Shown: piece by piece, positions 8,525 through 61,169 of the stretch
Layout: each line of letters opens with the position of its first letter
How positions within the stretch are numbered: position 1 is the stretch's first letter
IMG/VR virus record: IMGVR_UViG_3300050821_009835
Span: 124,001 to 188,000 of that record
Strand: one strand, 5' to 3'
Length of the DNA stretch: 64,000 nt
Position numbers and translations under genes: made by a program
Notes under the pieces: generated by a model
Databases searched by the model: none
The model's input: only the letters and a program-made list of their open reading frames with translations
Told to the model about the DNA's origin: nothing

Positions 8525-8990
8525 AATACAGAACACATTTAGACGCCGACTGTGATGTCAGCGACGCTAACGAAACGAGTTATCAATTCACTCCGGACCC
8601 GAGTTTACCGGGGGTACCACTAACTTTTGATAGAAGTTAGAAACTAGAGGAGCGACCAACCAGGCTCGCCGCCACCACCACTCACTCTAAATCAACGACC
8701 GGGGAGTGAGACCCTTAAAATTCAGGACTATACTGCGACTGGCTACGCAGGATCGCGGGACATCTACCCGAGGGTACAGCATTATCGAGCGTCCTGAAAA
8801 CTTTAATTGGCAATCGGCCTCGTAATTTGCAATCCGAGGTAAACGCCGAACCTTGGACATATCGCAATCCGTGCAACCAGATTAGCGCGGTAGCGGTCTT
8901 CAGGCGAAGTATTGATCTTCGATCCGGGTGTGCTGCCCGGTTGCCAGCTGCACTGTAAACAAGCTCGACTGTATTAGAGCCGTGCATCGA
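8525..8990 (-). ncRNA. Candidate ~460-nt structured ncRNA, family unassigned
   Basis: No credible ORF; many perfect hairpins and a multibranch closed by TTCAGGAC/GTCCTGAA; flanked by tRNAs. Confidence 0.5.
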
Positions 8991-10230: not shown

Positions 10231-10305
10231 TGGAGCCGCTAGAATGGTATGAACCATCCGACCCCCGGACTAAATGTCCGGTGCTCTACTCTGAGCTATA
10301 GCGGC
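10231..10305 (-). tRNA. Atypical tRNA-Lys(TTT)-like
   Basis: All four stems pair and CCA is encoded, but A33, D loop lacks GG, and T loop is 6 nt (TTCATA). Confidence 0.6.
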
Positions 10306-12709: not shown

Positions 12710-13165
12710 CTAATTTTTATCCTTAACGTTGATATACCCACGGCATTTCTTACTTCTGCATGAACAAACAACCAGCTCAGCAGCCCAATCGAAATTATAG
12801 TCTACGGTCAACTCTTCGCCTTTCTTAATAGAGCGACGGGCGACATAGTAAACTCGATGTCCGTGAAACCTAACCGTCAAATTAGGATCACAGGAATGAT
12901 TGATAAACTCTGCACCGCTGCCACCCGTGCGTCCATCAATGAGCCAATACCAAGGATCACCAATCTGCCAAATGTAGATGAGATTTTCTTCTGGTGTATC
13001 CTCAAAAAGCTGCTTGGCCGCCTTTCGGTTATAAAGGACACCTGTATATTCGATGACGTATCGTCGTGCTGGAATTTTCTCTTCAGTAATGACCCCATAA
13101 CGATGGATAGGGGACTTGATTAGCTTAAGCCGAAACCAAGCATAGTCCTGATTGATCTTAGACAA
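12710..13165 (-). CDS. SET-domain protein-lysine methyltransferase with post-SET cysteines
   Basis: SPIHRYGV, FINHSCDPN, GEELTVDYN, CSCRSKKCRG. Confidence 0.9.
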   Translation of the reverse strand: MSKINQDYAWFRLKLIKSPIHRYGVITEEKIPARRYVIEYTGVLYNRKAAKQLFEDTPEENLIYIWQIGDPWYWLIDGRTGGSGAEFINHSCDPNLTVRFHGHRVYYVARRSIKKGEELTVDYNFDWAAELVVCSCRSKKCRGYINVKDKN

Positions 13166-13712
13166 TAAAACTCCTTCGCAACTCCATCAGGAGTTTGCCC
13201 AACCAATTTTGCCCCGGCGCTTCGCACTCAGGTCTTTCACCACAAACACAATTACCCCAGAAATTGTCATGCCAAGTGTTTCCCTCTACCAATTCAGCAG
13301 AAAACGAGGCCATTAGTTTCCGCTTGAGGATACTATACGTGAATTTTTGTTGGAGTAAGTCACGCATGATAGGGATGTTTACTTGAAACCAATCCTTCCT
13401 AACCCTGGACTTCATGTTGGCCGCCATGCGCTTGGCCTGTCCCGGTTTTAACCCCTCATAACGAAACCGTGCTCGGATTTCCGGGTCTAGGAACTTAGCA
13501 GCTTGGTAGGCATGTTCCGTAGAGTCATAGACCTCTTCCGTATATGTGGTACCAGGCACGGCATAATGAGTCATCCCACCCCAAACCAGAGTCTGGCCAC
13601 CCAGCCCAACTCTAGCAACAAACAGCTTGACCTTAACCGGGCCATAGAAATTAGAATAGACAAACCACGGGCCTTCAAAACGATCGATTAAAGTTGGGAG
13701 CTGTACTGTCAT
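13158..13712 (-). CDS. NADAR (YbiA-like) family protein
   Basis: SNFY, STEHAYQAAKF, QKF, LVEGNTWHDNFWG, GQNWLGKLLMELR. Confidence 0.9.
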   Translation of the reverse strand: MTVQLPTLIDRFEGPWFVYSNFYGPVKVKLFVARVGLGGQTLVWGGMTHYAVPGTTYTEEVYDSTEHAYQAAKFLDPEIRARFRYEGLKPGQAKRMAANMKSRVRKDWFQVNIPIMRDLLQQKFTYSILKRKLMASFSAELVEGNTWHDNFWGNCVCGERPECEAPGQNWLGKLLMELRRSFIV

Positions 13713-45993: not shown

Positions 45994-46800
45994 TCAATCG
46001 TAGAGTCTCCAAAGTTTTTCTACTGGCAACCCAGTTACCGAAGCCACTTCTGAAAACGTGGGCTGCAATTCTTTTTCAAAAAGAAATTGTACTTGAGGAC
46101 ATTGCTGCTGCTTAGCACTCGTTCTTGCAGAAGGCCAGCCCTTGATTTCTACCAAATTTCCATCTACTAAAAAATCCGGGTAGAAATTGTATCGCACTCC
46201 CTCAAACTCGTAAGATAATGGCCGCCAATTTCTTTCTACTTTCTTTCCTAGCTGCAACGAATGAATGAGATAGGCACATTCCCAGGTGGACTGTACAAAC
46301 ATACCATGGTAGTATCCTGATTTACTACGGCCTCCACCTTCCCGTATTCCACCGCAGCGACCTTCAGCCTTTGCTTTGGCTAAACCTTCTTCATTGTGCA
46401 ATTTTCTACACGAAAGACAAACTGTCCAATTCCTAGGTATTTCTTGCCCACAAGCACAACGTTTAGGAGGCTTAGGAGGTAATAAAGAAACCCTATCATG
46501 GTGAGCCTGAGATATCCTTCTGCGAGTTGTTAACAAACACGGTCTTGTATTCGAACAAGACACAGAACAAGTTAACCCCTTACGTCTAGAAAATTGTTTT
46601 GGGGTGCATTCCAACAAAAACTGCTTTCCACAAACAACGCACTGAACCGGGTAAAGAACCTTTCGTTTGTTTTTCTTTGCCACTGCCAAATTCAAGGCTA
46701 CTCTGTCTGGACGTTTGAAGCAATTACGTATGTGCGCTCCCCAACTTCGCCCATCCTTAGGAAATCCTTCCCTACTTAGTCCACAGTACTGACAAGTCAT
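45994..46800 (-). CDS. TnsA-like PD-(D/E)XK homing endonuclease
   Basis: QSTWE, FYPDFLVDGNLVEIKGW; N-terminal zinc modules. Confidence 0.75.
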   Translation of the reverse strand: MTCQYCGLSREGFPKDGRSWGAHIRNCFKRPDRVALNLAVAKKNKRKVLYPVQCVVCGKQFLLECTPKQFSRRKGLTCSVSCSNTRPCLLTTRRRISQAHHDRVSLLPPKPPKRCACGQEIPRNWTVCLSCRKLHNEEGLAKAKAEGRCGGIREGGGRSKSGYYHGMFVQSTWECAYLIHSLQLGKKVERNWRPLSYEFEGVRYNFYPDFLVDGNLVEIKGWPSARTSAKQQQCPQVQFLFEKELQPTFSEVASVTGLPVEKLWRLYD

Positions 46801-46942: not shown

Positions 46943-46951
46943 AAAACATTC

Positions 46952-47325
46952 GCGCTGAACCTATAGCCAGGATTTTGTCGTGGACGACCATTCCTCTAGG
47001 CCACCCGTTACCGTGTGGCTCAAGCTCTCTACCCGCTGATTCCCCACTTCTTACGAAGTGAACGGGCCGGATCAGCCCTGCTCAGCCTATTTGAGATTGC
47101 TCCACGTGGAGATTGCCCGTTTCACCCTATGCTATGGCTGCGAGCCCCTCCCGCATTTAATCCCCAGTCGAGGGAACCAAGTCACAGACTCGTCTCTGTT
47201 GCTCTAATCGTCATTACGCCTTTCAGCGTAACGCTAGGGAGTTACCCTACACGCCATCCTGTGGAGTCCTGAACTTCCTCGGTAAGCAATTCCATCCTGC
47301 TTAACGCGATCGTCCAGTTCAACGC
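46952..47325 (-). ncRNA. rnpB: RNase P RNA, A-type-like, lacking P13/P14
   Basis: GAGGAAGTTCAGG (CR-I), ACAGAGAC (CR-II), GGGTGAAAC (CR-III), CTCCACGTGGAGCAA, AGAGGAAT (CR-IV), ACAAAATCCTGGCTA (CR-V); P1 GCGTTGAACT/GGTTCAGCGC. Confidence 0.92.
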
Positions 47326-47680: not shown

Positions 47681-47683
47681 AAA

Positions 47684-47854
47684 CTCGAGGGGTCTCGGGG
47701 ATTTCACGAAACGTTCCAGCCGTCGCTGTCTATCCCAGACCCTGAAAGCCCTAACGTGCACCTACTGGGACTCTGCTCTGCCGCTGAGCTACACCCCTGT
47801 CGGGATGGTTGGATTCGAACCAACGACCTGAGTCCGATCGATGCACAGGCTTTC
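47684..47854 (-). ncRNA. Circularly permuted tRNA-like (YrlA/Y-RNA-like) RNA, copy 1, with 3' extension
   Basis: Order: long stem, T arm (GTTGG TTCGAAT CCAAC), loop-closed acceptor stem, D arm (GCTC AGCGGCA GAGC), long stem. Confidence 0.75.
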
Positions 47855-47858
47855 GAAA

Positions 47859-47937
47859 TGGAGATGAAGGCAGGATTTGAACCTGCGATTACAGAGGTTG
47901 CAGCTCTGCCCCTTTAGCCAGACTTGGGTACTTCATC
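47859..47937 (-). tRNA. tRNA-Cys(GCA)
   Basis: Loop CTGCAAC; U73; CCA. Confidence 0.9.
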
Positions 47938-48579
47938 ATAAAGTCGTACGAAATCTTGTCCGTACTTGCCAGAAACATGATCCAAAATACCCTGCATCTG
48001 TTCCCACATTAGAAGATGAATCTTCCTGCTTCCAACGGCATCCAGTTTTCTCTACAAGATATCCTTGTCCACTACAAAACCCTTAATCTCTACTAAACTC
48101 CCATCCGCCAACTTGAAATCCGGTGTGTAGAAATGAACCACTTCATTACGGTCTAAGTAACCGAATCTTTCCCGATTTCTTTCAAAAGGAACACCGTGTT
48201 CCAATTGATAAATTACCCAAGCAAGTTCCCAAGAAGAGTCGCACCAAATTCCTTGATATCGGCCTTTAATGCCTCGCCCACCTCCCTGGTTGCCCAATCC
48301 TAATCGCTTCCTAGTATCACCAATCTTTTTCTTAGTTTCTTCGGACGGCGGTCCTGCTTTACTCCCGGTTCTAGCCCTTGCTGCTGCTTCTACTAAAGCC
48401 CGAACCTTTTCGTTTTCTATAGTCAACCCCTTATTCCAAGGTATCGTGCGTTCAGCTGGCTTAAAACTTACTCCTTTGCCATGCATCCTCCAAATGTGAC
48501 TTGTTAAGCCAAATAAGGACATTTCTTTCCGGCAAATAAAACAGCAAACAAAACCACCCTTAGAGCCTGTTGTTGGCAT
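47914..48579 (-). CDS. TnsA-like PD-(D/E)XK homing endonuclease with an in-frame TAG at 48052-48054
   Basis: CDSSWE..YTPDF..LVEIKGF; frame continues 46 codons past the TAG (..YGQDFVRLYDE) to a TAA inside tRNA-Cys. Confidence 0.75.
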
Positions 48580-48613
48580 AACTCCCTCTAAATAAGAGTA
48601 GGAAGTTTAAAAC

Positions 48614-48646
48614 CAGCTCTGTGCCTTACCACTTGGCCAACGGTCC
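48614..48646 (-). pseudogene. Orphan 5' half of a tRNA (Cys-like), truncated at the anticodon
   Basis: GGACCGTTGGCCAAGTGGTAAGGCACAGAGCTG followed directly by the endonuclease leader. Confidence 0.65.
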
Positions 48647-48659
48647 ATCTAAACTTTTT

Positions 48660-48734
48660 TGGCGGTGACGACGAGAGTCGAACTCGCATCCTACTCCGTG
48701 ACAGGGAGGCACTCTACCATTAAGCTACGTCACC
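48660..48734 (-). tRNA. tRNA-Asp(GTC)
   Basis: Loop CTGTCAC; G73; CCA. Confidence 0.9.
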
Positions 48735-48744
48735 GCATAAAACT

Positions 48745-48818
48745 TGGAGCGGGATAGGGTAATCGAAACCCTTTCTCCGGTCTGGCAGACCAGGGCACAC
48801 CCAATGTACCAATCCCGC
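48745..48818 (-). tRNA. tRNA-Gly(GCC)
   Basis: Loop CTGCCAG; U73; CCA. Confidence 0.88.
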
Positions 48819-48874
48819 TTTAAACGATGCGAATCTATACGCTCAAGACGTTCGTCGCGCCTAAATCTAAATTT

Positions 48875-48951
48875 TGGTACAGGGTGAGGGACTCGAACCC
48901 CCGACATTCTCCTTGTAAGGAAGACGCTTCTACCAACTGAGCTAACCCTGT
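48875..48951 (-). tRNA. tRNA-Val(TAC)
   Basis: Loop CTTACAA; CCA. Confidence 0.9.
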
Positions 48952-49177
48952 ACATTCTATCGTAAAATAGAAAAGACGCCATTAACAGGCGTCCTCGTTT
49001 TACGATTCGGATGTCTTGTTTTACTCTCCGAATCCCTCCGAGGACACTTGCCCCTCCGCCGCGACGCAGCATTCAGCTGCAGTACCGCTATCTCGCACGA
49101 AAGTGTTATTGGTCGTCATGTTATAATAATACCTAGGTATTTGGAAAATCGGGTATAACTAGTGAAATAAAAACTAA

Positions 49178-49203
49178 AGGCCCGAATCTTCTTCTTCGGG
49201 CCT
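49178..49203 (-). terminator. Intrinsic terminator
   Basis: AGGCCCGAA/TTCGGGCCT hairpin followed by TTAGTTTTTATTT. Confidence 0.7.
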
Positions 49204-49239
49204 TCTACTGCCGATGCCGTCGATCGTTACAGGACAACA

Positions 49240-49275
49240 TTAAAAGTTGAAAGGAACCATGATGGTTTTTCGCAT
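49240..49275 (-). CDS. 11-aa small ORF (MRKTIMVPFNF)
   Basis: Strong AAGGAGG RBS; sits between the large ncRNA and the terminator. Confidence 0.4.
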   Translation of the reverse strand: MRKTIMVPFNF

Positions 49276-49715
49276 AGTTATTGTCCTCCTTTTCTTAAAT
49301 TGCACAAAATTCGATCCCCAGCGAGGCCTATGGTATCCCCGCTTCTTTAAAGAGAGCCAACACCCTCCTCCGTTATTGTAGTCCTCCGGTGTTGGCCTTG
49401 GGCGGAGATCTCTGCCCCGTCGTCGACCGGGTTGGCTCCCTCCGCCTCAATTCACTCGGGTGCATCCTACTTCCAGCGGCAATTTGGTTCCGTTTTAGAC
49501 CTAAAGACTTCTTAGGAATCCAGTTTCGGCAGCACCCGCGCTTTTGCGTTTACATCGTACGCTGTGGACGTGTACCTGACCCGCTCCGACCCGAACGTGG
49601 CCGAACGATCGTTGGCAAACGGCGGCTAACGCTTCCCACAGCTAAACTTAATCCAGGAACGCCCTCCTGCGCTCAACAAGGCAGTTATGCACTATACACC
49701 GTGTTCCCGAACCCT

Positions 49716-49791
49716 TGGTGGAGGATGCAGGGATCGAACCTGCGACCTATTGCTTGCAAAGCAATCGCTCTCCCAACTGAGCTAATCCCCC
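49716..49791 (-). tRNA. tRNA-Ala(TGC)
   Basis: Canonical; G3:U70; loop TTTGCAA; CCA. Confidence 0.93.
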
Positions 49792-49887
49792 GACAGCAGC
49801 GTGTCCGAATACCGCGTTGCTCTGCGTTCACAGACTTCGATTCCGACTCGCACCTGACCTCCGGGTAACTTCCCTCATAGTACTCAG

Positions 49888-49938
49888 AAAGTACAGAAAA
49901 TACAAAAGTACAGAAAATACAAAAGTACAGAAAATACA
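49888..49938. repeat. Three exact tandem copies of the 17-nt unit AAAGTACAGAAAATACA
   Basis: Read directly from the sequence. Confidence 0.9.
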
Positions 49939-50314
49939 TCGGCTACAGTAACCCTGCACGTTGAACTATTGCCAGTTAGACTTCGGGACGTTGCCACCGT
50001 CGCACCTATGATGCTTCGGGTTATGCGGGTCATGACTCCCGTGGCAGTGGGTTTTAGCCCTAACCAACCGTGCACAGTATGCAGCCGAATCTTAAGCCTT
50101 AGAAGAACGCGGCGGGAAACTTCCTAGGCAAGTCCCGCCGCATCTCTATCCGTTTCTCCGCCAGGACTGCGCGAGTACTCGGGCTGCTCGTTGCGCGTAT
50201 ACTCAGCGCGATTACCTCTGGATGACCGCTCTGGTGGTCCTGCGTTGCTCTTCGTTACTAGCTGTTAGGCCTCACGGGTGCTGCCCGCTCTGGTCCTCCT
50301 GCGCTTCATCCAAA

Positions 50315-50487
50315 CTCGAGAGGTCTAGGGGATTTCACGATAGTTCCAGCCGTCGCTGTCTATCCCAGACCCTGGAGCTGTCAACGCATCGTCTACTGAG
50401 GTCTGCTCTTCCATTGCGCTACATCCCCTTAACGGAGAAGGAGGGAATCGAACCCCCGACCTGACCTTATCGACGATACTCTGCTCC
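50315..50487 (-). ncRNA. Circularly permuted tRNA-like (YrlA/Y-RNA-like) RNA, copy 2, with 3' extension
   Basis: T arm GGGGG TTCGATT CCCTC; acceptor-like stem closed by GTTAA; D arm GCGC AATGGAA GAGC; compensatory stem changes versus copy 1. Confidence 0.75.
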
Positions 50488-50494
50488 AAACTTA

Positions 50495-58196: not shown

Positions 58197-59312
58197 ATGC
58201 TATATACCATGAATGACAGCATTTTCAGAATACAGTCCATCGACCGTAATTTGATCCATTGGGAAGACCATCTTCTGGATCTCAGTCCTTGCGAAAAAAT
58301 TGGTGGCATGTGGTTTAAACGAGAGGATTTCTTTGCCCCTTTAGGATTTGGTGGTATCAATGGCAGCAAACTCCGTGTTTGCATTTGGCTAATTAACGAA
58401 GCACTCAAGCAAGGGGCCAAGGGGGTTTCGCATGGTGCTGTGATAGGTTCCCCTCAACATCCCATGGTAGCTTGTATTGCTGCTCATTACAATGTTCCAG
58501 TGATTGATTGTATTGGTACTAAGAAACCACTTGAACACGAAACTTTAGCGACGGCTGCATGGATGGGGGCAGAATTCCGTTCGTTTAATCCGGGCTTTGC
58601 AGCTACATTAAACAGCAAGGCCGAACAGATTGCAAAAGAACTTAGATATTTCCATTTAGAAACTAACATCACTGTAGATCAGGAGAAGAATCCTGCGGCT
58701 CGGGTGGAAGCATTTCACAAGGTCGGCAGTGTGCAGGTCCAAAATATTCCTGATCACATTGAGAACATCATCGTGCCAGCGGGTAGTTGCAACAGTGTGA
58801 CCTCTGTCTTATACGGGATTGCCCAATATCGCCCCAAGAATCTCCAGAATGTTATCCTCATGGGCATTGGTTCTTGCGGTAGTTCTGATCCGACTTACAT
58901 CCATCGTCGTCTGCAAATTATCGAAGGAGTAAGTGGAGTAAACTCTCAGGACATGTTTGGTTGGTTCCTGAACTACAAACACAACAATCCTAGCCAAAGC
59001 GCGGCCACTTGGCCTCGTAAATTCTCACCTATCTACACATTAACCCATTATGATGTAAATGGGGGCTGTGGACAGTGTAAGAAGTGCGAAGGAGGGTATT
59101 GCACCTACAACGATCTGATGCCCTATCGATTTAATGATCTGGATTTTCACCCGAGGTATGAGGGTAAGATGATGTGTTTCATGGGAGATCATCTATCCGA
59201 ATTCCAACAGTATCTCAATGACAAGACACTCTTCTGGATTGTTGGATCTAAGCCATCTGCGGCAGCGATGGCTCCGGTATTGAAGGAGAAATTTGGGGAT
59301 TTTTATGAGTGA
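58197..59312 (+). CDS. PLP-dependent enzyme (fold type II, ACC-deaminase-like) of the DNA hypermodification cassette
   Basis: WFKRED..GGINGSKLR PLP lysine, GSPQ, VPAGSCNS, FHPRYEGK, LFWIVG. Confidence 0.8.
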   Translation: MLYTMNDSIFRIQSIDRNLIHWEDHLLDLSPCEKIGGMWFKREDFFAPLGFGGINGSKLRVCIWLINEALKQGAKGVSHGAVIGSPQHPMVACIAAHYNVPVIDCIGTKKPLEHETLATAAWMGAEFRSFNPGFAATLNSKAEQIAKELRYFHLETNITVDQEKNPAARVEAFHKVGSVQVQNIPDHIENIIVPAGSCNSVTSVLYGIAQYRPKNLQNVILMGIGSCGSSDPTYIHRRLQIIEGVSGVNSQDMFGWFLNYKHNNPSQSAATWPRKFSPIYTLTHYDVNGGCGQCKKCEGGYCTYNDLMPYRFNDLDFHPRYEGKMMCFMGDHLSEFQQYLNDKTLFWIVGSKPSAAAMAPVLKEKFGDFYE

Positions 59313-60525
59313 TCTTTTCTACAGCCCGTTCGATCAAGAAGTCATAGGGCTTGACAAAATACTCGTGTGTTCAGCAGATCATACGACTCCAGGCCGCTAT
59401 TGTGAACTTTTGGGCTTGTTTGAACAACAGGATCTTAAAGAGGGCATGGATTTTCGCAAGCCGGAATTCCGAAGGGAAGTATTTCTACGTTTCTACGAGT
59501 TCTGCCTGAAGTATCGGCTGCACGCCGGGGCTAGTCTACCCTACATGACGTTCCCGTTCTTGAGCAAAGAAATTGGTTGGGGGCGGGAGGAGTTGCTGTG
59601 GTTCGTTTTCATCAACGGGAACACTCAACATCCGTTGACTTCTTGGGTTATTTTCAATCAGTTCCCTGACTTTGCTAATCTAGATATCCCGGCTCTGGAT
59701 GCTTGGTACAACAAGGAATGGCCTCGTCTTGAATTTGACACAGATCGTCGACACCAGAAACGCGATTTTATCAAATCGGTTACTCGCTATAAGGAACTCT
59801 GTGGATGTAGAGATCAAGCGTGGCTTTTTCACAACCAAATAGTAAGCGACGACCCACTTGAGAATTTTCAAGTTGTATGGGATATGGTGCGTAAGGATTT
59901 CTATTCTTTTGGTCGTATGAGTACGTTTTCTTATCTTGAGTACCTGCGTATCGCTCGGCTGAACATTGAGCCGAACTCTTTGTTTCTAGAAGACATATCC
60001 GGGAGTAAATCGCTTCGTAATGGTTTGGCAAAAGTATTGGGCCGGGATGACCTCGATTGGGGTGGCCCGGATAACCCTACAGGGTTCGAAGGAAAGTATA
60101 CTCCTCAGATGATGGATTGGTTGAAAAAAGAAGGTGCCATCCTTCTTGAGGAAGCTAAGAAAAGATTCAAAGGCCGGGATTTCGCTCAGGATGTGACTTA
60201 TTTTACGCTGGAATCGGAGTTCTGTACTTACAAGGGCTGGCATCGCTTAAATCGGCGTTACCCTGGAGTTTATGCTGATATTTTTCATGGAAGAATTAAG
60301 AAAGCCGAGGCCCGTTGGCCCGAAGAGGATTTTTCGGTCTTTTGGAAGATGCGTCAGCAAATGTTGCCTCAGTATTTGCGTCTTGAGGATAGTCCTGGGG
60401 ATCCTGGTTTAAAGCCTGAGAAACAAAATCACTACCGAGAAACTGGGCAGGTTATCATGATGTTGGACTGGTCCTGTTTTAAGAATGATTTTAACGATAG
60501 AATTTTGAGTATTGAAGCAACATGA
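59293..60525 (+). CDS. Amino acid:DNA transferase (aGPT-pyrophosphorylase clade 2-like)
   Basis: W..F..GNTQ, FDTDRR, FGRMSTFSYLE, SGSKS.RNGL, FTLES..C.YK, RRYPG.Y.D; flanked by a PLP enzyme and a kinase. Confidence 0.75.
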   Translation: MGIFMSDLFYSPFDQEVIGLDKILVCSADHTTPGRYCELLGLFEQQDLKEGMDFRKPEFRREVFLRFYEFCLKYRLHAGASLPYMTFPFLSKEIGWGREELLWFVFINGNTQHPLTSWVIFNQFPDFANLDIPALDAWYNKEWPRLEFDTDRRHQKRDFIKSVTRYKELCGCRDQAWLFHNQIVSDDPLENFQVVWDMVRKDFYSFGRMSTFSYLEYLRIARLNIEPNSLFLEDISGSKSLRNGLAKVLGRDDLDWGGPDNPTGFEGKYTPQMMDWLKKEGAILLEEAKKRFKGRDFAQDVTYFTLESEFCTYKGWHRLNRRYPGVYADIFHGRIKKAEARWPEEDFSVFWKMRQQMLPQYLRLEDSPGDPGLKPEKQNHYRETGQVIMMLDWSCFKNDFNDRILSIEAT

Positions 60526-61169
60526 AATGCCTTATAACTATCCTCGGGGCGGGGGCATCGGGTAAGTCCACGCTAACTCGTGCGTTGTGTGGTTCTGGAG
60601 GAAAAGAAGAAGTTGTCTTCTACAATGTAGAAGGCAAGGCAGAAAAAGCTAAATTTGTCCTCTTTCCAAACGGCGCTGCGATAGCGGGGAACCTACAAAG
60701 CACCTCTGATTCTGTCAGCAGTATGGAAGCCCGTTCTTTACTAATCCAGGATTTGCTTAAACGTCCAGATGTTCAATTCGTGGTCACAGATGGTGTTCGT
60801 TCGAGTAAGAAATGGGATGTAGACTGGGTACAGGAGAAGTTGGACTGCGCCGTTGTCTATGTGTATTTGGATATCCCCCTGGAAGAGAATCTTCGACGTT
60901 TAGTGGCAAGAAGAGCAGCCAAGGGTAAAACGGAGATGAATCCGAAGACGTACGAGAACATGTTGGCATTCCGCGAGCGAGCTGCCTTTGTTTGGAAATC
61001 TGCCATTGATACTTACAAACGTCAGCCTGTTAAGTTTATCAAATTGATTGAGGGCCAGACTGTTCAGGATTGGACTCGTGAAGTTAAGCGAACCATTTCG
61101 CAAATGTTTGACTCTGAAGATCAACGTGCGAAAAGAGCGCAGCACTTTAAAAACAGCACTAGTTATTAG
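60522..61169 (+). CDS. P-loop kinase, probable 5hmU DNA kinase
   Basis: ILGAGASGKST, VTDG, YLDIPLEE.L.R..ARR; cassette context. Confidence 0.7.
   Translation: MKCLITILGAGASGKSTLTRALCGSGGKEEVVFYNVEGKAEKAKFVLFPNGAAIAGNLQSTSDSVSSMEARSLLIQDLLKRPDVQFVVTDGVRSSKKWDVDWVQEKLDCAVVYVYLDIPLEENLRRLVARRAAKGKTEMNPKTYENMLAFRERAAFVWKSAIDTYKRQPVKFIKLIEGQTVQDWTREVKRTISQMFDSEDQRAKRAQHFKNSTSY

What the first reader, a model, noticed from the sequence alone, without database searches (positions are those of the whole stretch)
47684..50487. Two circularly permuted tRNA-like (YrlA/Y-RNA-type) RNAs with compensatory covariation
Seen: both minus-strand elements (47684-47854, 50315-50487) read long stem, AGGTC, T arm, acceptor-like stem closed by a short loop (GACA or GTTAA), TA, D arm, long stem, with no anticodon loop. 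The long stems differ in sequence but keep pairing (GTGCATC/GGTGCAC versus GTATCGTC/GACGATGC; GGACTC/GAGTCC versus AGGTC/GACCT) and keep an invariant CGAT/CAGTAG internal loop. Copy 2 keeps a tRNA-Ala-like GGGGATG with G3:U70. Established: T-AS-D order is the topology of bacterial YrlA Y RNAs, which bind Ro60/Rsr; CGAU/AGUAG matches a loop-E submotif; GUCGA/UAGAC resembles the Ro-binding helix. Inference: these are phage tRNA mimics, possibly decoys for Ro60/PNPase, RtcB or anticodon nucleases. No Ro60/TROVE gene is in this window.
Basis: partly seen in the sequence, partly recalled or inferred. Interest (0 to 1): 0.9.

Follow-up and report, generated by a model that had tools for sequence, protein, structure and literature searches.

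The report
Two phage Y-RNA-like tRNA mimics
Two small RNA genes in a roughly 265-kb soil phage fold like a circularly permuted tRNA, the hallmark of bacterial Y RNAs that normally partner the Ro60 protein, but no Ro60 gene was found in the third of the genome I could read, and each carries a conserved tail motif that also occurs in other phages, mostly beside their tRNA genes.

Summary
Both minus-strand elements (47742-47856 and 50371-50490) fold as stalk, variable loop, T arm, capped acceptor hairpin, D arm, stalk, with no anticodon loop. Rfam's YrlA model matches both over its full length (44.6 and 30.6 bits). That is below Rfam's 69-bit cut-off, but phage Y RNAs lying next to Ro60 genes score in the same range (29-45 bits). 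A model built from copy 1 alone finds copy 2 (E about 1e-11) and also finds Ro60-adjacent Y RNAs in other phages. Ten of 36 base pairs differ on both sides between the copies while pairing is kept. No TROVE/Ro60 or DUF2828 gene lies in the window or within about 10 kb on either side. The closest cultured relative, Tunturiibacter phage Tunturi_5, has an analogous element and no such gene anywhere in its genome. This motif is 95% identical between the copies, against 65% for the Y-like part. Its core recurs in Tunturi_5 and in IMG/VR phages, mostly in tRNA or tmRNA arrays, and matches no Rfam family. Verdict: a new variant of the known YrlA class, fused to an apparently undescribed RNA motif. 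Its partner and function are untested.

The parts
47742..47856 (-). Copy 1, YrlA-like domain (115 nt): a three-helix stalk enclosing a permuted tRNA-like core
   Evidence: Rfam YrlA 44.6 bits, E=6e-8, model 1-114. MFE fold z=-4.8. Seed of model R1.
47774..47829 (-). Copy 1 tRNA-like core: AGGUC, T arm, acceptor hairpin capped by GACA, UA, D arm
   Evidence: Fold. By eye, U8/A14, G15/C48, G18G19 with the UUCGA T loop, and G53-C61 are all present.
47836..47839 (-). Copy 1 stalk internal loop, 5' strand (GAUC)
   Evidence: Letters GAU are identical in both copies. GAU opposite GUA equals a bacterial 5S loop E submotif (own knowledge).
47763..47767 (-). Copy 1 stalk internal loop, 3' strand (CAGUA)
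   Evidence: Identical in both copies.
47681..47741 (-). Copy 1 3' module (conserved motif core 47693-47740); ends at the first base of tRNA-Ala(ggc)
   Evidence: 61 of 64 aligned bases identical to copy 2. Core shared with Tunturi_5 and IMG/VR phages. No Rfam match.
50371..50490 (-). Copy 2, YrlA-like domain (120 nt)
   Evidence: Rfam YrlA 30.6 bits, E=6.5e-4. R1 56.8 bits, E=1.3e-11.
50404..50462 (-). Copy 2 tRNA-like core: acceptor hairpin capped by GUUAA, with G3:U70
   Evidence: Departures from copy 1: D-stem G-A mismatch, A15/C48 instead of a Levitt pair, U6-U67 mismatch.
50310..50370 (-). Copy 2 3' module (motif core 50324-50370)

Best explanation
These are two genes for structured RNAs of the YrlA (bacterial Y RNA) class, carried by a roughly 265-kb phage related to Acidobacteriota jumbo phages.

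**Shown.**
- The fold: a permuted tRNA elbow on a 21-bp stalk.
- Reciprocal covariance-model similarity to Ro60-linked phage Y RNAs.
- Compensatory changes between the two copies.
- Their position inside a minus-strand array of tRNA genes and an RNase P RNA gene.
- A fused 3' motif that recurs in other phages.

**Inferred.**
- They are co-transcribed with the tRNAs and cut out by tRNA-end processing. Copy 1 plus its module fills the tRNA-Cys to tRNA-Ala spacer except for 2 nt after tRNA-Cys, so the cuts that free those tRNAs would release a ~176-nt two-domain RNA.
- The elbow presents a tRNA-like surface to tRNA-handling enzymes: RNase P (possibly the phage's own), the CCA-adding enzyme and modification enzymes, as shown for M. 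smegmatis YrlA.
- The stalk, with its invariant loop-E-like GAU/GUA loop, and the 3' motif hold a protein partner. That partner could be a Ro60 ortholog from the host or from the unread part of the genome, or another RNA-binding protein.
- The RNA would then work as a scaffold or gate that redirects RNA decay or repair during infection.
For: - Rfam's YrlA model matches both copies over its full length. The scores equal those of TROVE-adjacent phage Y RNAs: L043 39.9, L083 32.7, L022 29.0 bits (TROVE genes confirmed).
- Model R1, built from copy 1 alone, hits RNAs 100-2000 nt upstream of TROVE genes on the same strand: L126 38.3 bits (E=6e-6), plus L185, L125, L160 and L173.
- Ten compensatory pairs separate the copies, eight of them in the non-tRNA stalk.
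- Two Y-like RNAs per locus is usual in TROVE phages.
- Both elements lie in a minus-strand tRNA array. The nearest terminator-like sites on that strand are downstream of copy 2 and upstream of copy 1 (49205-49176 and 48996-48972; tRNA map).
- An RNase P RNA gene lies about 360 nt downstream of copy 1's module.
- Chen et al. 2014 (PMC4201824) reported YrlA RNAs in mycobacteriophages and showed that M. smegmatis YrlA is cut by RNase P and receives CCA.
- The 3' motif is conserved across unrelated phages.
Against: - No TROVE or DUF2828 gene lies in the window, in the 9 kb to its right, or among the called genes of the 10 kb to its left.
- The complete genome of the relative Tunturi_5 has none.
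- The GNCGAAN0-1G Rsr site is missing at the aligned position.
- Both scores are below Rfam's gathering threshold.
- There are no expression data.
- No homolog of this exact subtype was found elsewhere, so the covariation rests on two paralogs.
- Copy 2 is partly degenerate.
Confidence: 0.55

Rival explanations
1. Ro60-independent tRNA mimic. The elbow titrates or recruits tRNA-processing enzymes or tRNA-directed host defences, or it simply serves as a processing and stability punctuation mark in the polycistronic tRNA transcript. The 3' motif would be the functional payload.
For: - No Ro60-type gene in the window, in the ~19 kb of flanks checked, or in all 309 kb of Tunturi_5.
- 6 of 13 IMG/VR loci with YrlA-like RNAs show no TROVE or DUF2828 gene in the fetched flanks.
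- The canonical Rsr motif is absent.
- The phage carries its own RNase P RNA next door.
- The 3' motif also occurs without any Y-like RNA in other phages.
Against: - Model similarity to Ro60-linked Y RNAs runs both ways.
- Two thirds of the genome could not be read.
- The host may supply Ro60.
- An RNA lacking an anticodon loop cannot be a substrate decoy for anticodon nucleases.
Confidence: 0.25
2. Precursor of a two-piece, aminoacylatable tRNA-like or tmRNA-like molecule. RNase P opens the acceptor loop, CCA is added, and copy 2 (G3:U70) is charged with alanine.
For: - The topology equals the tRNA-like domain of permuted tmRNA genes.
- Copy 2's acceptor stem is that of tRNA-Ala(cgc) with one change.
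- M. smegmatis YrlA is cut by RNase P and receives CCA.
Against: - ARAGORN finds no tmRNA.
- The Rfam permuted-tmRNA model scores 15.9 bits, E=2.5.
- A 1-nt indel puts the two modules in different reading frames, and neither frame ends like a tag.
- Every phage tRNA whose 3' end I printed (seven genes) encodes CCA, but these elements do not.
- Copy 1 lacks G3:U70.
Confidence: 0.08
3. Decaying remnants of tandem tRNA genes (the 3' half of one plus the 5' half of the next) with no function of their own.
For: - A tandem tRNA duplication followed by deletion gives exactly this order of parts.
- Tandem tRNAs give weak YrlA hits of 22-23 bits.
- Copy 2 has mismatches.
- Homing-endonuclease-like genes and a tRNA fragment nearby show that the array is being rearranged.
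Against: - 15 stalk pairs beyond the anticodon-like stem have no tRNA origin, and six of them changed on both sides with pairing kept.
- The internal-loop letters are invariant.
- Scores are well above those of tandem-tRNA artefacts.
- Both copies keep the same junction to the 3' motif.
Confidence: 0.06

Closest known systems
YrlA RNAs (Rfam RF02553; S. Typhimurium, M. smegmatis, mycobacteriophages; Chen et al. 2014, PMC4201824)
   Same: T arm, capped acceptor hairpin and D arm in that order, closed by a stem, with no anticodon loop. tRNA tertiary-pair nucleotides are kept in copy 1. Full-length CM matches run in both directions. Two such RNAs per genome. In phages they sit in tRNA arrays.
   Different: Not next to a Ro60 gene. 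No GNCGAAN0-1G at the usual place. The stalk is a regular 21-bp rod with a loop-E-like GAU/GUA loop directly under the anticodon-like stem. The variable loop is AGGUC, as in the phage's own tRNAs. A conserved 62-nt motif is fused to the 3' end.
Ro60-adjacent Y RNAs of IMG/VR phages (e.g. L022, L043, L083, L126, L185)
   Same: Same Rfam score range (29-45 bits) and hit by model R1. Embedded among tRNA genes.
   Different: They lie 0.1-2 kb upstream of a TROVE gene and carry a GGGUCG(A/G)A 5' motif. None carries the 3' motif.
Two-piece (permuted) tmRNA
   Same: Permuted tRNA-like domain on a long interrupted helix. G3:U70 in copy 2.
   Different: No tag reading frame, no pseudoknots, no encoded CCA. 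Not detected by ARAGORN or by the Rfam models.
Permuted tRNA-like element of Tunturiibacter phage Tunturi_5 (PP885688, about 253,898-254,013; not annotated in the record)
   Same: T-acceptor-D order with a 6-bp anticodon-like stem, located in a tRNA array of a phage sharing a syntenic replication module with this one.
   Different: A 48-nt insert caps its acceptor stem. Its stalk is not evident. The 3' motif lies 1.4 kb away between two tRNAs, not fused to it.

Membership tests
YrlA / bacterial Y RNA | tRNA-like module in T - acceptor - D order closed by a stem, without an anticodon loop | tested here: met
   MFE fold; Rfam YrlA alignment over model positions 1-114 for both copies; R1 alignment.
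YrlA / bacterial Y RNA | Score at or above Rfam's gathering threshold (69 bits) | tested here: not met
   44.6 and 30.6 bits. The threshold also excludes phage Y RNAs that sit next to TROVE genes (29-45 bits), so it is not discriminating here.
YrlA / bacterial Y RNA | Rsr/Ro60-binding helix with GNCGAAN0-1G | tested here: inconclusive
   Absent where the Rfam model aligns it. AUCGAU (copy 1) and GUCGAU (copy 2) at the inner loop match 4 and 5 of the 6 motif positions. TROVE-linked phage Y RNAs show GGGUCG(A/G)A.
YrlA / bacterial Y RNA | Gene adjacent to a Ro60 (TROVE) gene | tested here: not met
   Profiles from 3 and then 64 phage TROVE proteins, and from DUF2828 proteins, give no hit at E<=1 in six-frame ORFs of the window or L192. 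The gene list for the 10 kb to the left has none. About 180 kb of the genome could not be read.
YrlA / bacterial Y RNA | Nucleotides for tRNA tertiary pairs (U8-A14, 15:48, G18G19 with the T loop, G53-C61) | tested here: met
   Read from the sequence. All are present in copy 1. Copy 2 has A15/C48 and a D-stem G-A mismatch, so it meets this only partly.
YrlA / bacterial Y RNA | Binds Ro60; substrate of RNase P, CCA-adding and tRNA modification enzymes | not testable with these tools
   Needs biochemistry.
Two-piece tmRNA | Tag reading frame with resume codon, pseudoknots, encoded or added CCA | tested here: not met
   ARAGORN finds none. tmRNA_permuted scores 15.9 bits, E=2.5. The reading frames differ between the copies.
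Permuted tRNA genes (algal/archaeal type) | An anticodon loop restored after joining the ends; bulge-helix-bulge at the junction | tested here: not met
   The junction is a 15-bp helix with a 4x5 loop. Joining the loop strands gives 9 nt without U33 (reading).
Hammerhead ribozyme (considered for the 3' module) | CUGANGA and GAAA cores around three stems | tested here: not met
   GAAA plus the UA dinucleotide after the closing helix (the cleavage-site position) resemble the hammerhead core, but CUGANGA is absent in all nine sequences. No Rfam ribozyme hit at E<=10.

The most novel reading that the evidence does not exclude
The ~45-75-nt 3' motif has the core GGG-W-W-AGA-Y, then a variable insert of 7-43 nt, then GGAACG...UCGUGARAUCCCC. 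It may be a new class of structured phage RNA domain that binds a conserved cellular factor or ligand. Here it would be fused to a Ro60-independent tRNA-elbow mimic, making a two-domain RNA that the phage's own RNase P helps mature. It occurs in at least four unrelated phage lineages and in four contexts:
- fused to the Y-like RNA (this phage, twice);
- free between two tRNAs (Tunturi_5);
- at the tip of a ~150-nt RNA beside tmRNA genes (the L287 group);
- upstream of an ORF (L303).

It has no Rfam family.
Probability: 0.3. Interest if true: 0.75.

Novelty: new variant of a known kind. Interest (0 to 1): 0.55.

Why it matters
Bacterial Y RNAs are understood only as partners of Ro60: they tether it to PNPase and gate its cavity.

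- **A test of Ro60 dependence.** A phage lineage that keeps two well-formed YrlA-type RNAs, and whose cultured relative has no Ro60-type gene anywhere in its genome, would show one of two things. Either phages supply Y RNAs to reprogramme a host Ro60, or the tRNA-like Y RNA fold has a Ro60-independent job.
- **A laboratory route.** Tunturi_5 and its host are in culture, which makes this question testable.
- **A new motif to characterise.** The fused 3' motif is conserved at the sequence level across unrelated phages and is missing from Rfam.
- **A self-contained toolkit.** The neighbouring phage RNase P RNA hints that this phage carries its own tRNA-processing machinery.

Tried and rejected
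**Searches that found nothing beyond this phage.**
- Exact and degenerate DNA patterns for the module and for the TCGAU...CAGUAG subtype, run against IMG/VR, JGI metagenomes and GTDB genomes, found only this phage. The single GTDB hit (L200) is an ordinary tRNA-Ala.
- The flanking 307-aa protein has no close relative in IMG/VR. DNA search of INPHARED phages found only tRNA matches.
- The module has no complementary target and no extra copy in the window.

**The hunt for Ro60 in the rest of the genome.**
- Two scans with TROVE alignments found 66 and then 369 TROVE-bearing contigs, with only the best 80 of the latter kept. This contig was not listed, which is inconclusive.
- Walking leftwards along the contig failed because the only place shown carries no DNA.
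- A TROVE gene from the same metagenome belongs to a different 90-kb phage.

**Identities rejected for the elements.**
- tmRNA, permuted tRNA, hammerhead, other Rfam ribozymes and riboswitches, and 5S rRNA: rejected on the grounds given in the membership rows.
- Protein-coding: rejected because of the frame shift between the copies.

**Structure of the 3' motif.** Covariation is insufficient. One pair covaries, no better than shuffles, and the fold energy is not unusual.

**Literature.** The supplements of Chen et al. 2014 are not held, so I could not check whether Acidobacteria carry rsr.
Full report
**What the window is.** It is part of a phage genome of about 265 kb. Two independent assemblies give contigs of 264,912 and 264,969 bp, and a 340-kb JGI metagenome contig is identical over the 4 kb of it that was fetched. 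The window carries 24 tRNA genes, all on the minus strand, a bacterial type A RNase P RNA gene (170 bits), replication and nucleotide-metabolism genes, and a DNA-hypermodification cluster. No close DNA relative exists among deposited phages. By protein, the nearest cultured relative is Tunturiibacter phage Tunturi_5, a 309-kb myovirus of Acidobacteriota from tundra soil. Its UvsX is 46% identical, and about 20 kb of replication genes are syntenic (PMC11924767).

**Check of the observation.** Both elements are as described. Copy 1 (47742-47856, minus) folds, without any constraint, into:
- an 8-bp outer helix;
- a 7-bp second helix;
- a 4x5 internal loop;
- a 6-bp anticodon-like stem;
- AGGUC;
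- a T arm with a UUCGAAU loop;
- a 6-bp acceptor hairpin capped by GACA;
- UA;
- a D arm.

The fold has z = -4.8, and no shuffle folds as well. Copy 2 (50371-50490) has the same plan with a GUUAA cap, but with a D-stem G-A mismatch, a U-U mismatch in the acceptor stem and A15/C48 in place of a Levitt pair. Its fold is less exceptional (z = -2.3). Its acceptor stem is that of the phage's tRNA-Ala(cgc) with one change, including G3:U70. Neither ARAGORN nor the tRNA model calls a tRNA there.

**Class.** Rfam's YrlA model matches both copies from end to end: 44.6 bits (E=6e-8) and 30.6 bits (E=6.5e-4) in a 3.3-kb search, and these are the only two such matches in the 64 kb. Both are below Rfam's 69-bit threshold. 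So I measured what real phage Y RNAs score. I fetched IMG/VR loci with the T-loop, short hairpin, D-arm pattern and confirmed TROVE/Ro60 genes beside three of them. Their Y RNAs score 29-45 bits and none reaches 69. In the other direction, a covariance model built from copy 1 alone (R1) finds copy 2 at 56.8 bits (E=1.3e-11). In 867 kb of other phage DNA it picks out RNAs lying 100-2000 nt upstream of TROVE genes on the same strand (L126 38.3 bits, E=6e-6; also L185, L125, L160, L173). The elements therefore belong structurally with phage YrlA-type RNAs. Tandem tRNAs, the known source of false positives, reach only 22-23 bits.

**Covariation.** On the model-based alignment of the two copies the Y-like domains are 65% identical. 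Of 36 pairs, 94.4% of cells pair, 10 pairs changed on both sides and 4 changed by wobble. Eight of the ten lie in the three stalk helices, which have no counterpart in tRNA. With partners slid by 1-3 columns the counts drop to 0-2 changed pairs and 41-48% pairing. Limits: there are two sequences, and the alignment was fitted to copy 1's structure. The internal loop keeps the same letters in both copies (GAU opposite CAGUA). From my own knowledge (Leontis and Westhof 1998), GAU opposite GUA is one submotif of bacterial 5S rRNA loop E, a common protein-binding site. This was not tested here.

**The partner question.**
- Profiles built from 3 and then 64 phage TROVE proteins, and from the DUF2828/DUF7788 proteins that sit beside YrlA-like RNAs in L057 and L093, find nothing at E<=1. 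This covers all six frames of the window and the 9 kb to its right.
- The called genes of the 10 kb to the left include no TROVE gene.
- None of the roughly 50 larger ORFs scanned with Pfam shows RtcB, PNPase or CCA-adding domains.
- I could not read the remaining ~180 kb.
- The complete Tunturi_5 genome, fetched in seven pieces, has no TROVE or DUF2828 gene. It does encode RtcB and a CCA-adding enzyme next to its tRNA arrays. It also holds an unannotated permuted tRNA-like element (Rfam YrlA 29.7 bits, E=0.003; R1 24.7 bits) whose acceptor stem is capped by a 48-nt insert.
- Ro60 is common in phages. At least 369 IMG/VR contigs encode it, several of them from this same soil sample.
- Local orphans are common too. 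6 of 13 YrlA-like loci show no TROVE or DUF2828 gene in their fetched flanks.
- The canonical Rsr motif GNCGAAN0-1G is missing where the model expects it. Only the inner-loop UCGAU resembles it.

**The 3' module.** The last ~62 nt of each element (47681-47741 and 50310-50370) are 95% identical between the copies (61 of 64 bases). They match no Rfam family at E<=10. They are out of frame with each other, so they are not coding.

A profile of the two copies gave a weak hit in Tunturi_5, in the spacer between tRNA-Val and tRNA-Lys. The alignment there shows the same blocks in the same order, with a different but still complementary outer helix.

A pattern taken from the shared 3' block found 30 other IMG/VR stretches besides the two in this contig. 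Eight of them (six distinct sequences) also carry the 5' block GGG-W-W-AGA-Y at 7-43 nt upstream, where about 0.05 would be expected by chance. In the L287 group the motif is the tip of a ~150-nt conserved RNA with a covarying closing helix, beside tRNA and tmRNA genes on the same strand. In L303 it sits 22 nt upstream of a small ORF. No Rfam family covers any of these places.

The motif's secondary structure remains unproven. A short closing helix has one covarying pair (C-G three times, U-A three times), no better than shuffles. A profile of all nine sequences finds no further member in 2.6 Mb of held phage DNA, so the motif is not a general companion of Y RNAs.

**How it probably works.**
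- *Shown:* the fold, the class, the compensatory changes, the array context and the motif's recurrence.
- *Inferred:* the elements are transcribed with the tRNAs. Terminator-like hairpins on the minus strand lie at 49205-49176 and 48996-48972. Copy 1 plus its module fills the gap between tRNA-Cys (ends 47859) and tRNA-Ala (starts 47680) except for 2 nt, so tRNA 3'-end and RNase P cuts would release one ~176-nt two-domain RNA.
- *By analogy with M. smegmatis YrlA:* RNase P may also open the acceptor cap and CCA may be added. The phage's own RNase P RNA gene lies about 360 nt downstream.
- *Proposed role:* the stalk loop and the 3' motif are the likeliest protein-binding sites. I consider a scaffold or gate role with a Ro60 ortholog (from the host or the unread part of the genome) or with another RNA-binding protein most likely. 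A Ro60-independent tRNA-mimic role is the main rival.

**Novelty.** YrlA RNAs in phages have been known since 2014, so the class is not new. Four things are new here:
- the subtype, with a regular stalk carrying a loop-E-like loop and no canonical Rsr motif;
- the lack of a neighbouring Ro60 gene in a lineage whose cultured member has none at all;
- the fusion to a conserved motif that appears to be undescribed;
- the neighbourhood of a phage-encoded RNase P RNA.

Noticed in passing
window 46948-47325 (-): A phage-encoded bacterial type A RNase P RNA (170.3 bits, full model) with a long insertion and a 43-position deletion, sitting between tRNA-Ala and tRNA-Gly. I saw none in the Rfam-scanned parts of Tunturi_5's two main tRNA-array regions, nor in 19 other phage loci carrying tRNA genes or the 3' motif. 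Two full-text searches gave no paper on phage RNase P RNA.
   Followed up: partly
window 45994-46800 (-) and 47917-48579 (-): Two paralogous endonuclease-like ORFs lie inside the tRNA array (weak Phage_endo_I and PHROG endonuclease hits). The second stops at an in-frame TAG after 175 aa. A 45-aa continuation then aligns weakly with the paralog's C-terminus (both end in RLYD) and overlaps tRNA-Cys. This is either a pseudogene or stop-codon read-through. The two pieces were searched separately.
   Followed up: partly
window 48613-48646 (-): An orphan 5' half of a tRNA (acceptor strand, D arm, anticodon stem up to CUG) directly upstream of the 175-aa endonuclease-like ORF. Its 3' half is missing, which looks like a scar of an insertion into an anticodon loop.
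   Followed up: no
window 49210-49715 and 49800-50310 (-): Two ~500-nt stretches without convincing ORFs or Rfam matches, lying between copy 2, tRNA-Ala and a strong terminator-like hairpin (49205-49176). They include a 17-nt unit repeated three times at about 49888-49937 and a GC-rich hairpin near 50110-50145. They may hold further RNA genes.
   Followed up: no
L057:3-1328 and L093:9919-11364 (IMG/VR loci): DUF2828 + DUF7788 proteins lie directly beside YrlA-like RNAs, where TROVE genes sit in other phages. The phage TROVE profile hits them weakly (E about 1e-4). This suggests a second, Ro60-like partner family for phage Y RNAs.
   Followed up: partly
L197:3898-4013 and L197:2463-2529 (PP885688 about 253,898-254,013 and 252,463-252,529): Tunturi_5 carries an unannotated permuted tRNA-like element and, 1.4 kb upstream of it, a copy of the conserved 3' motif between tRNA-Val and tRNA-Lys. 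The deposited record annotates no RNA genes in the stretches I fetched.
   Followed up: yes
L287:1688-1835, L296:118-268, L302:395-568, L308:2040-2187, L310:158-336: A ~150-nt conserved RNA with a covarying closing helix and the motif at its tip, beside tRNA and tmRNA genes in 47-112-kb viral contigs. No Rfam family matches it.
   Followed up: partly
window 58197-61169 (+): A likely DNA hypermodification cluster: a PLP-enzyme-like ORF, an amino acid:DNA transferase (ADDT, E=1e-18) and a P-loop kinase.
   Followed up: no
window 12710-13712 (-) and the left flank of the window: A SET-domain protein and a NADAR-domain protein lie next to the first tRNA cluster. A RelA_SpoT + InPase gene lies about 9 kb left of the window.
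   Followed up: no
window 8606-8718 (-) and 10234-10305 (-): A sub-threshold wcaG RNA match (29.7 bits, E=0.14), and a tRNA found by the Rfam tRNA model (42.9 bits) that ARAGORN missed.
   Followed up: no
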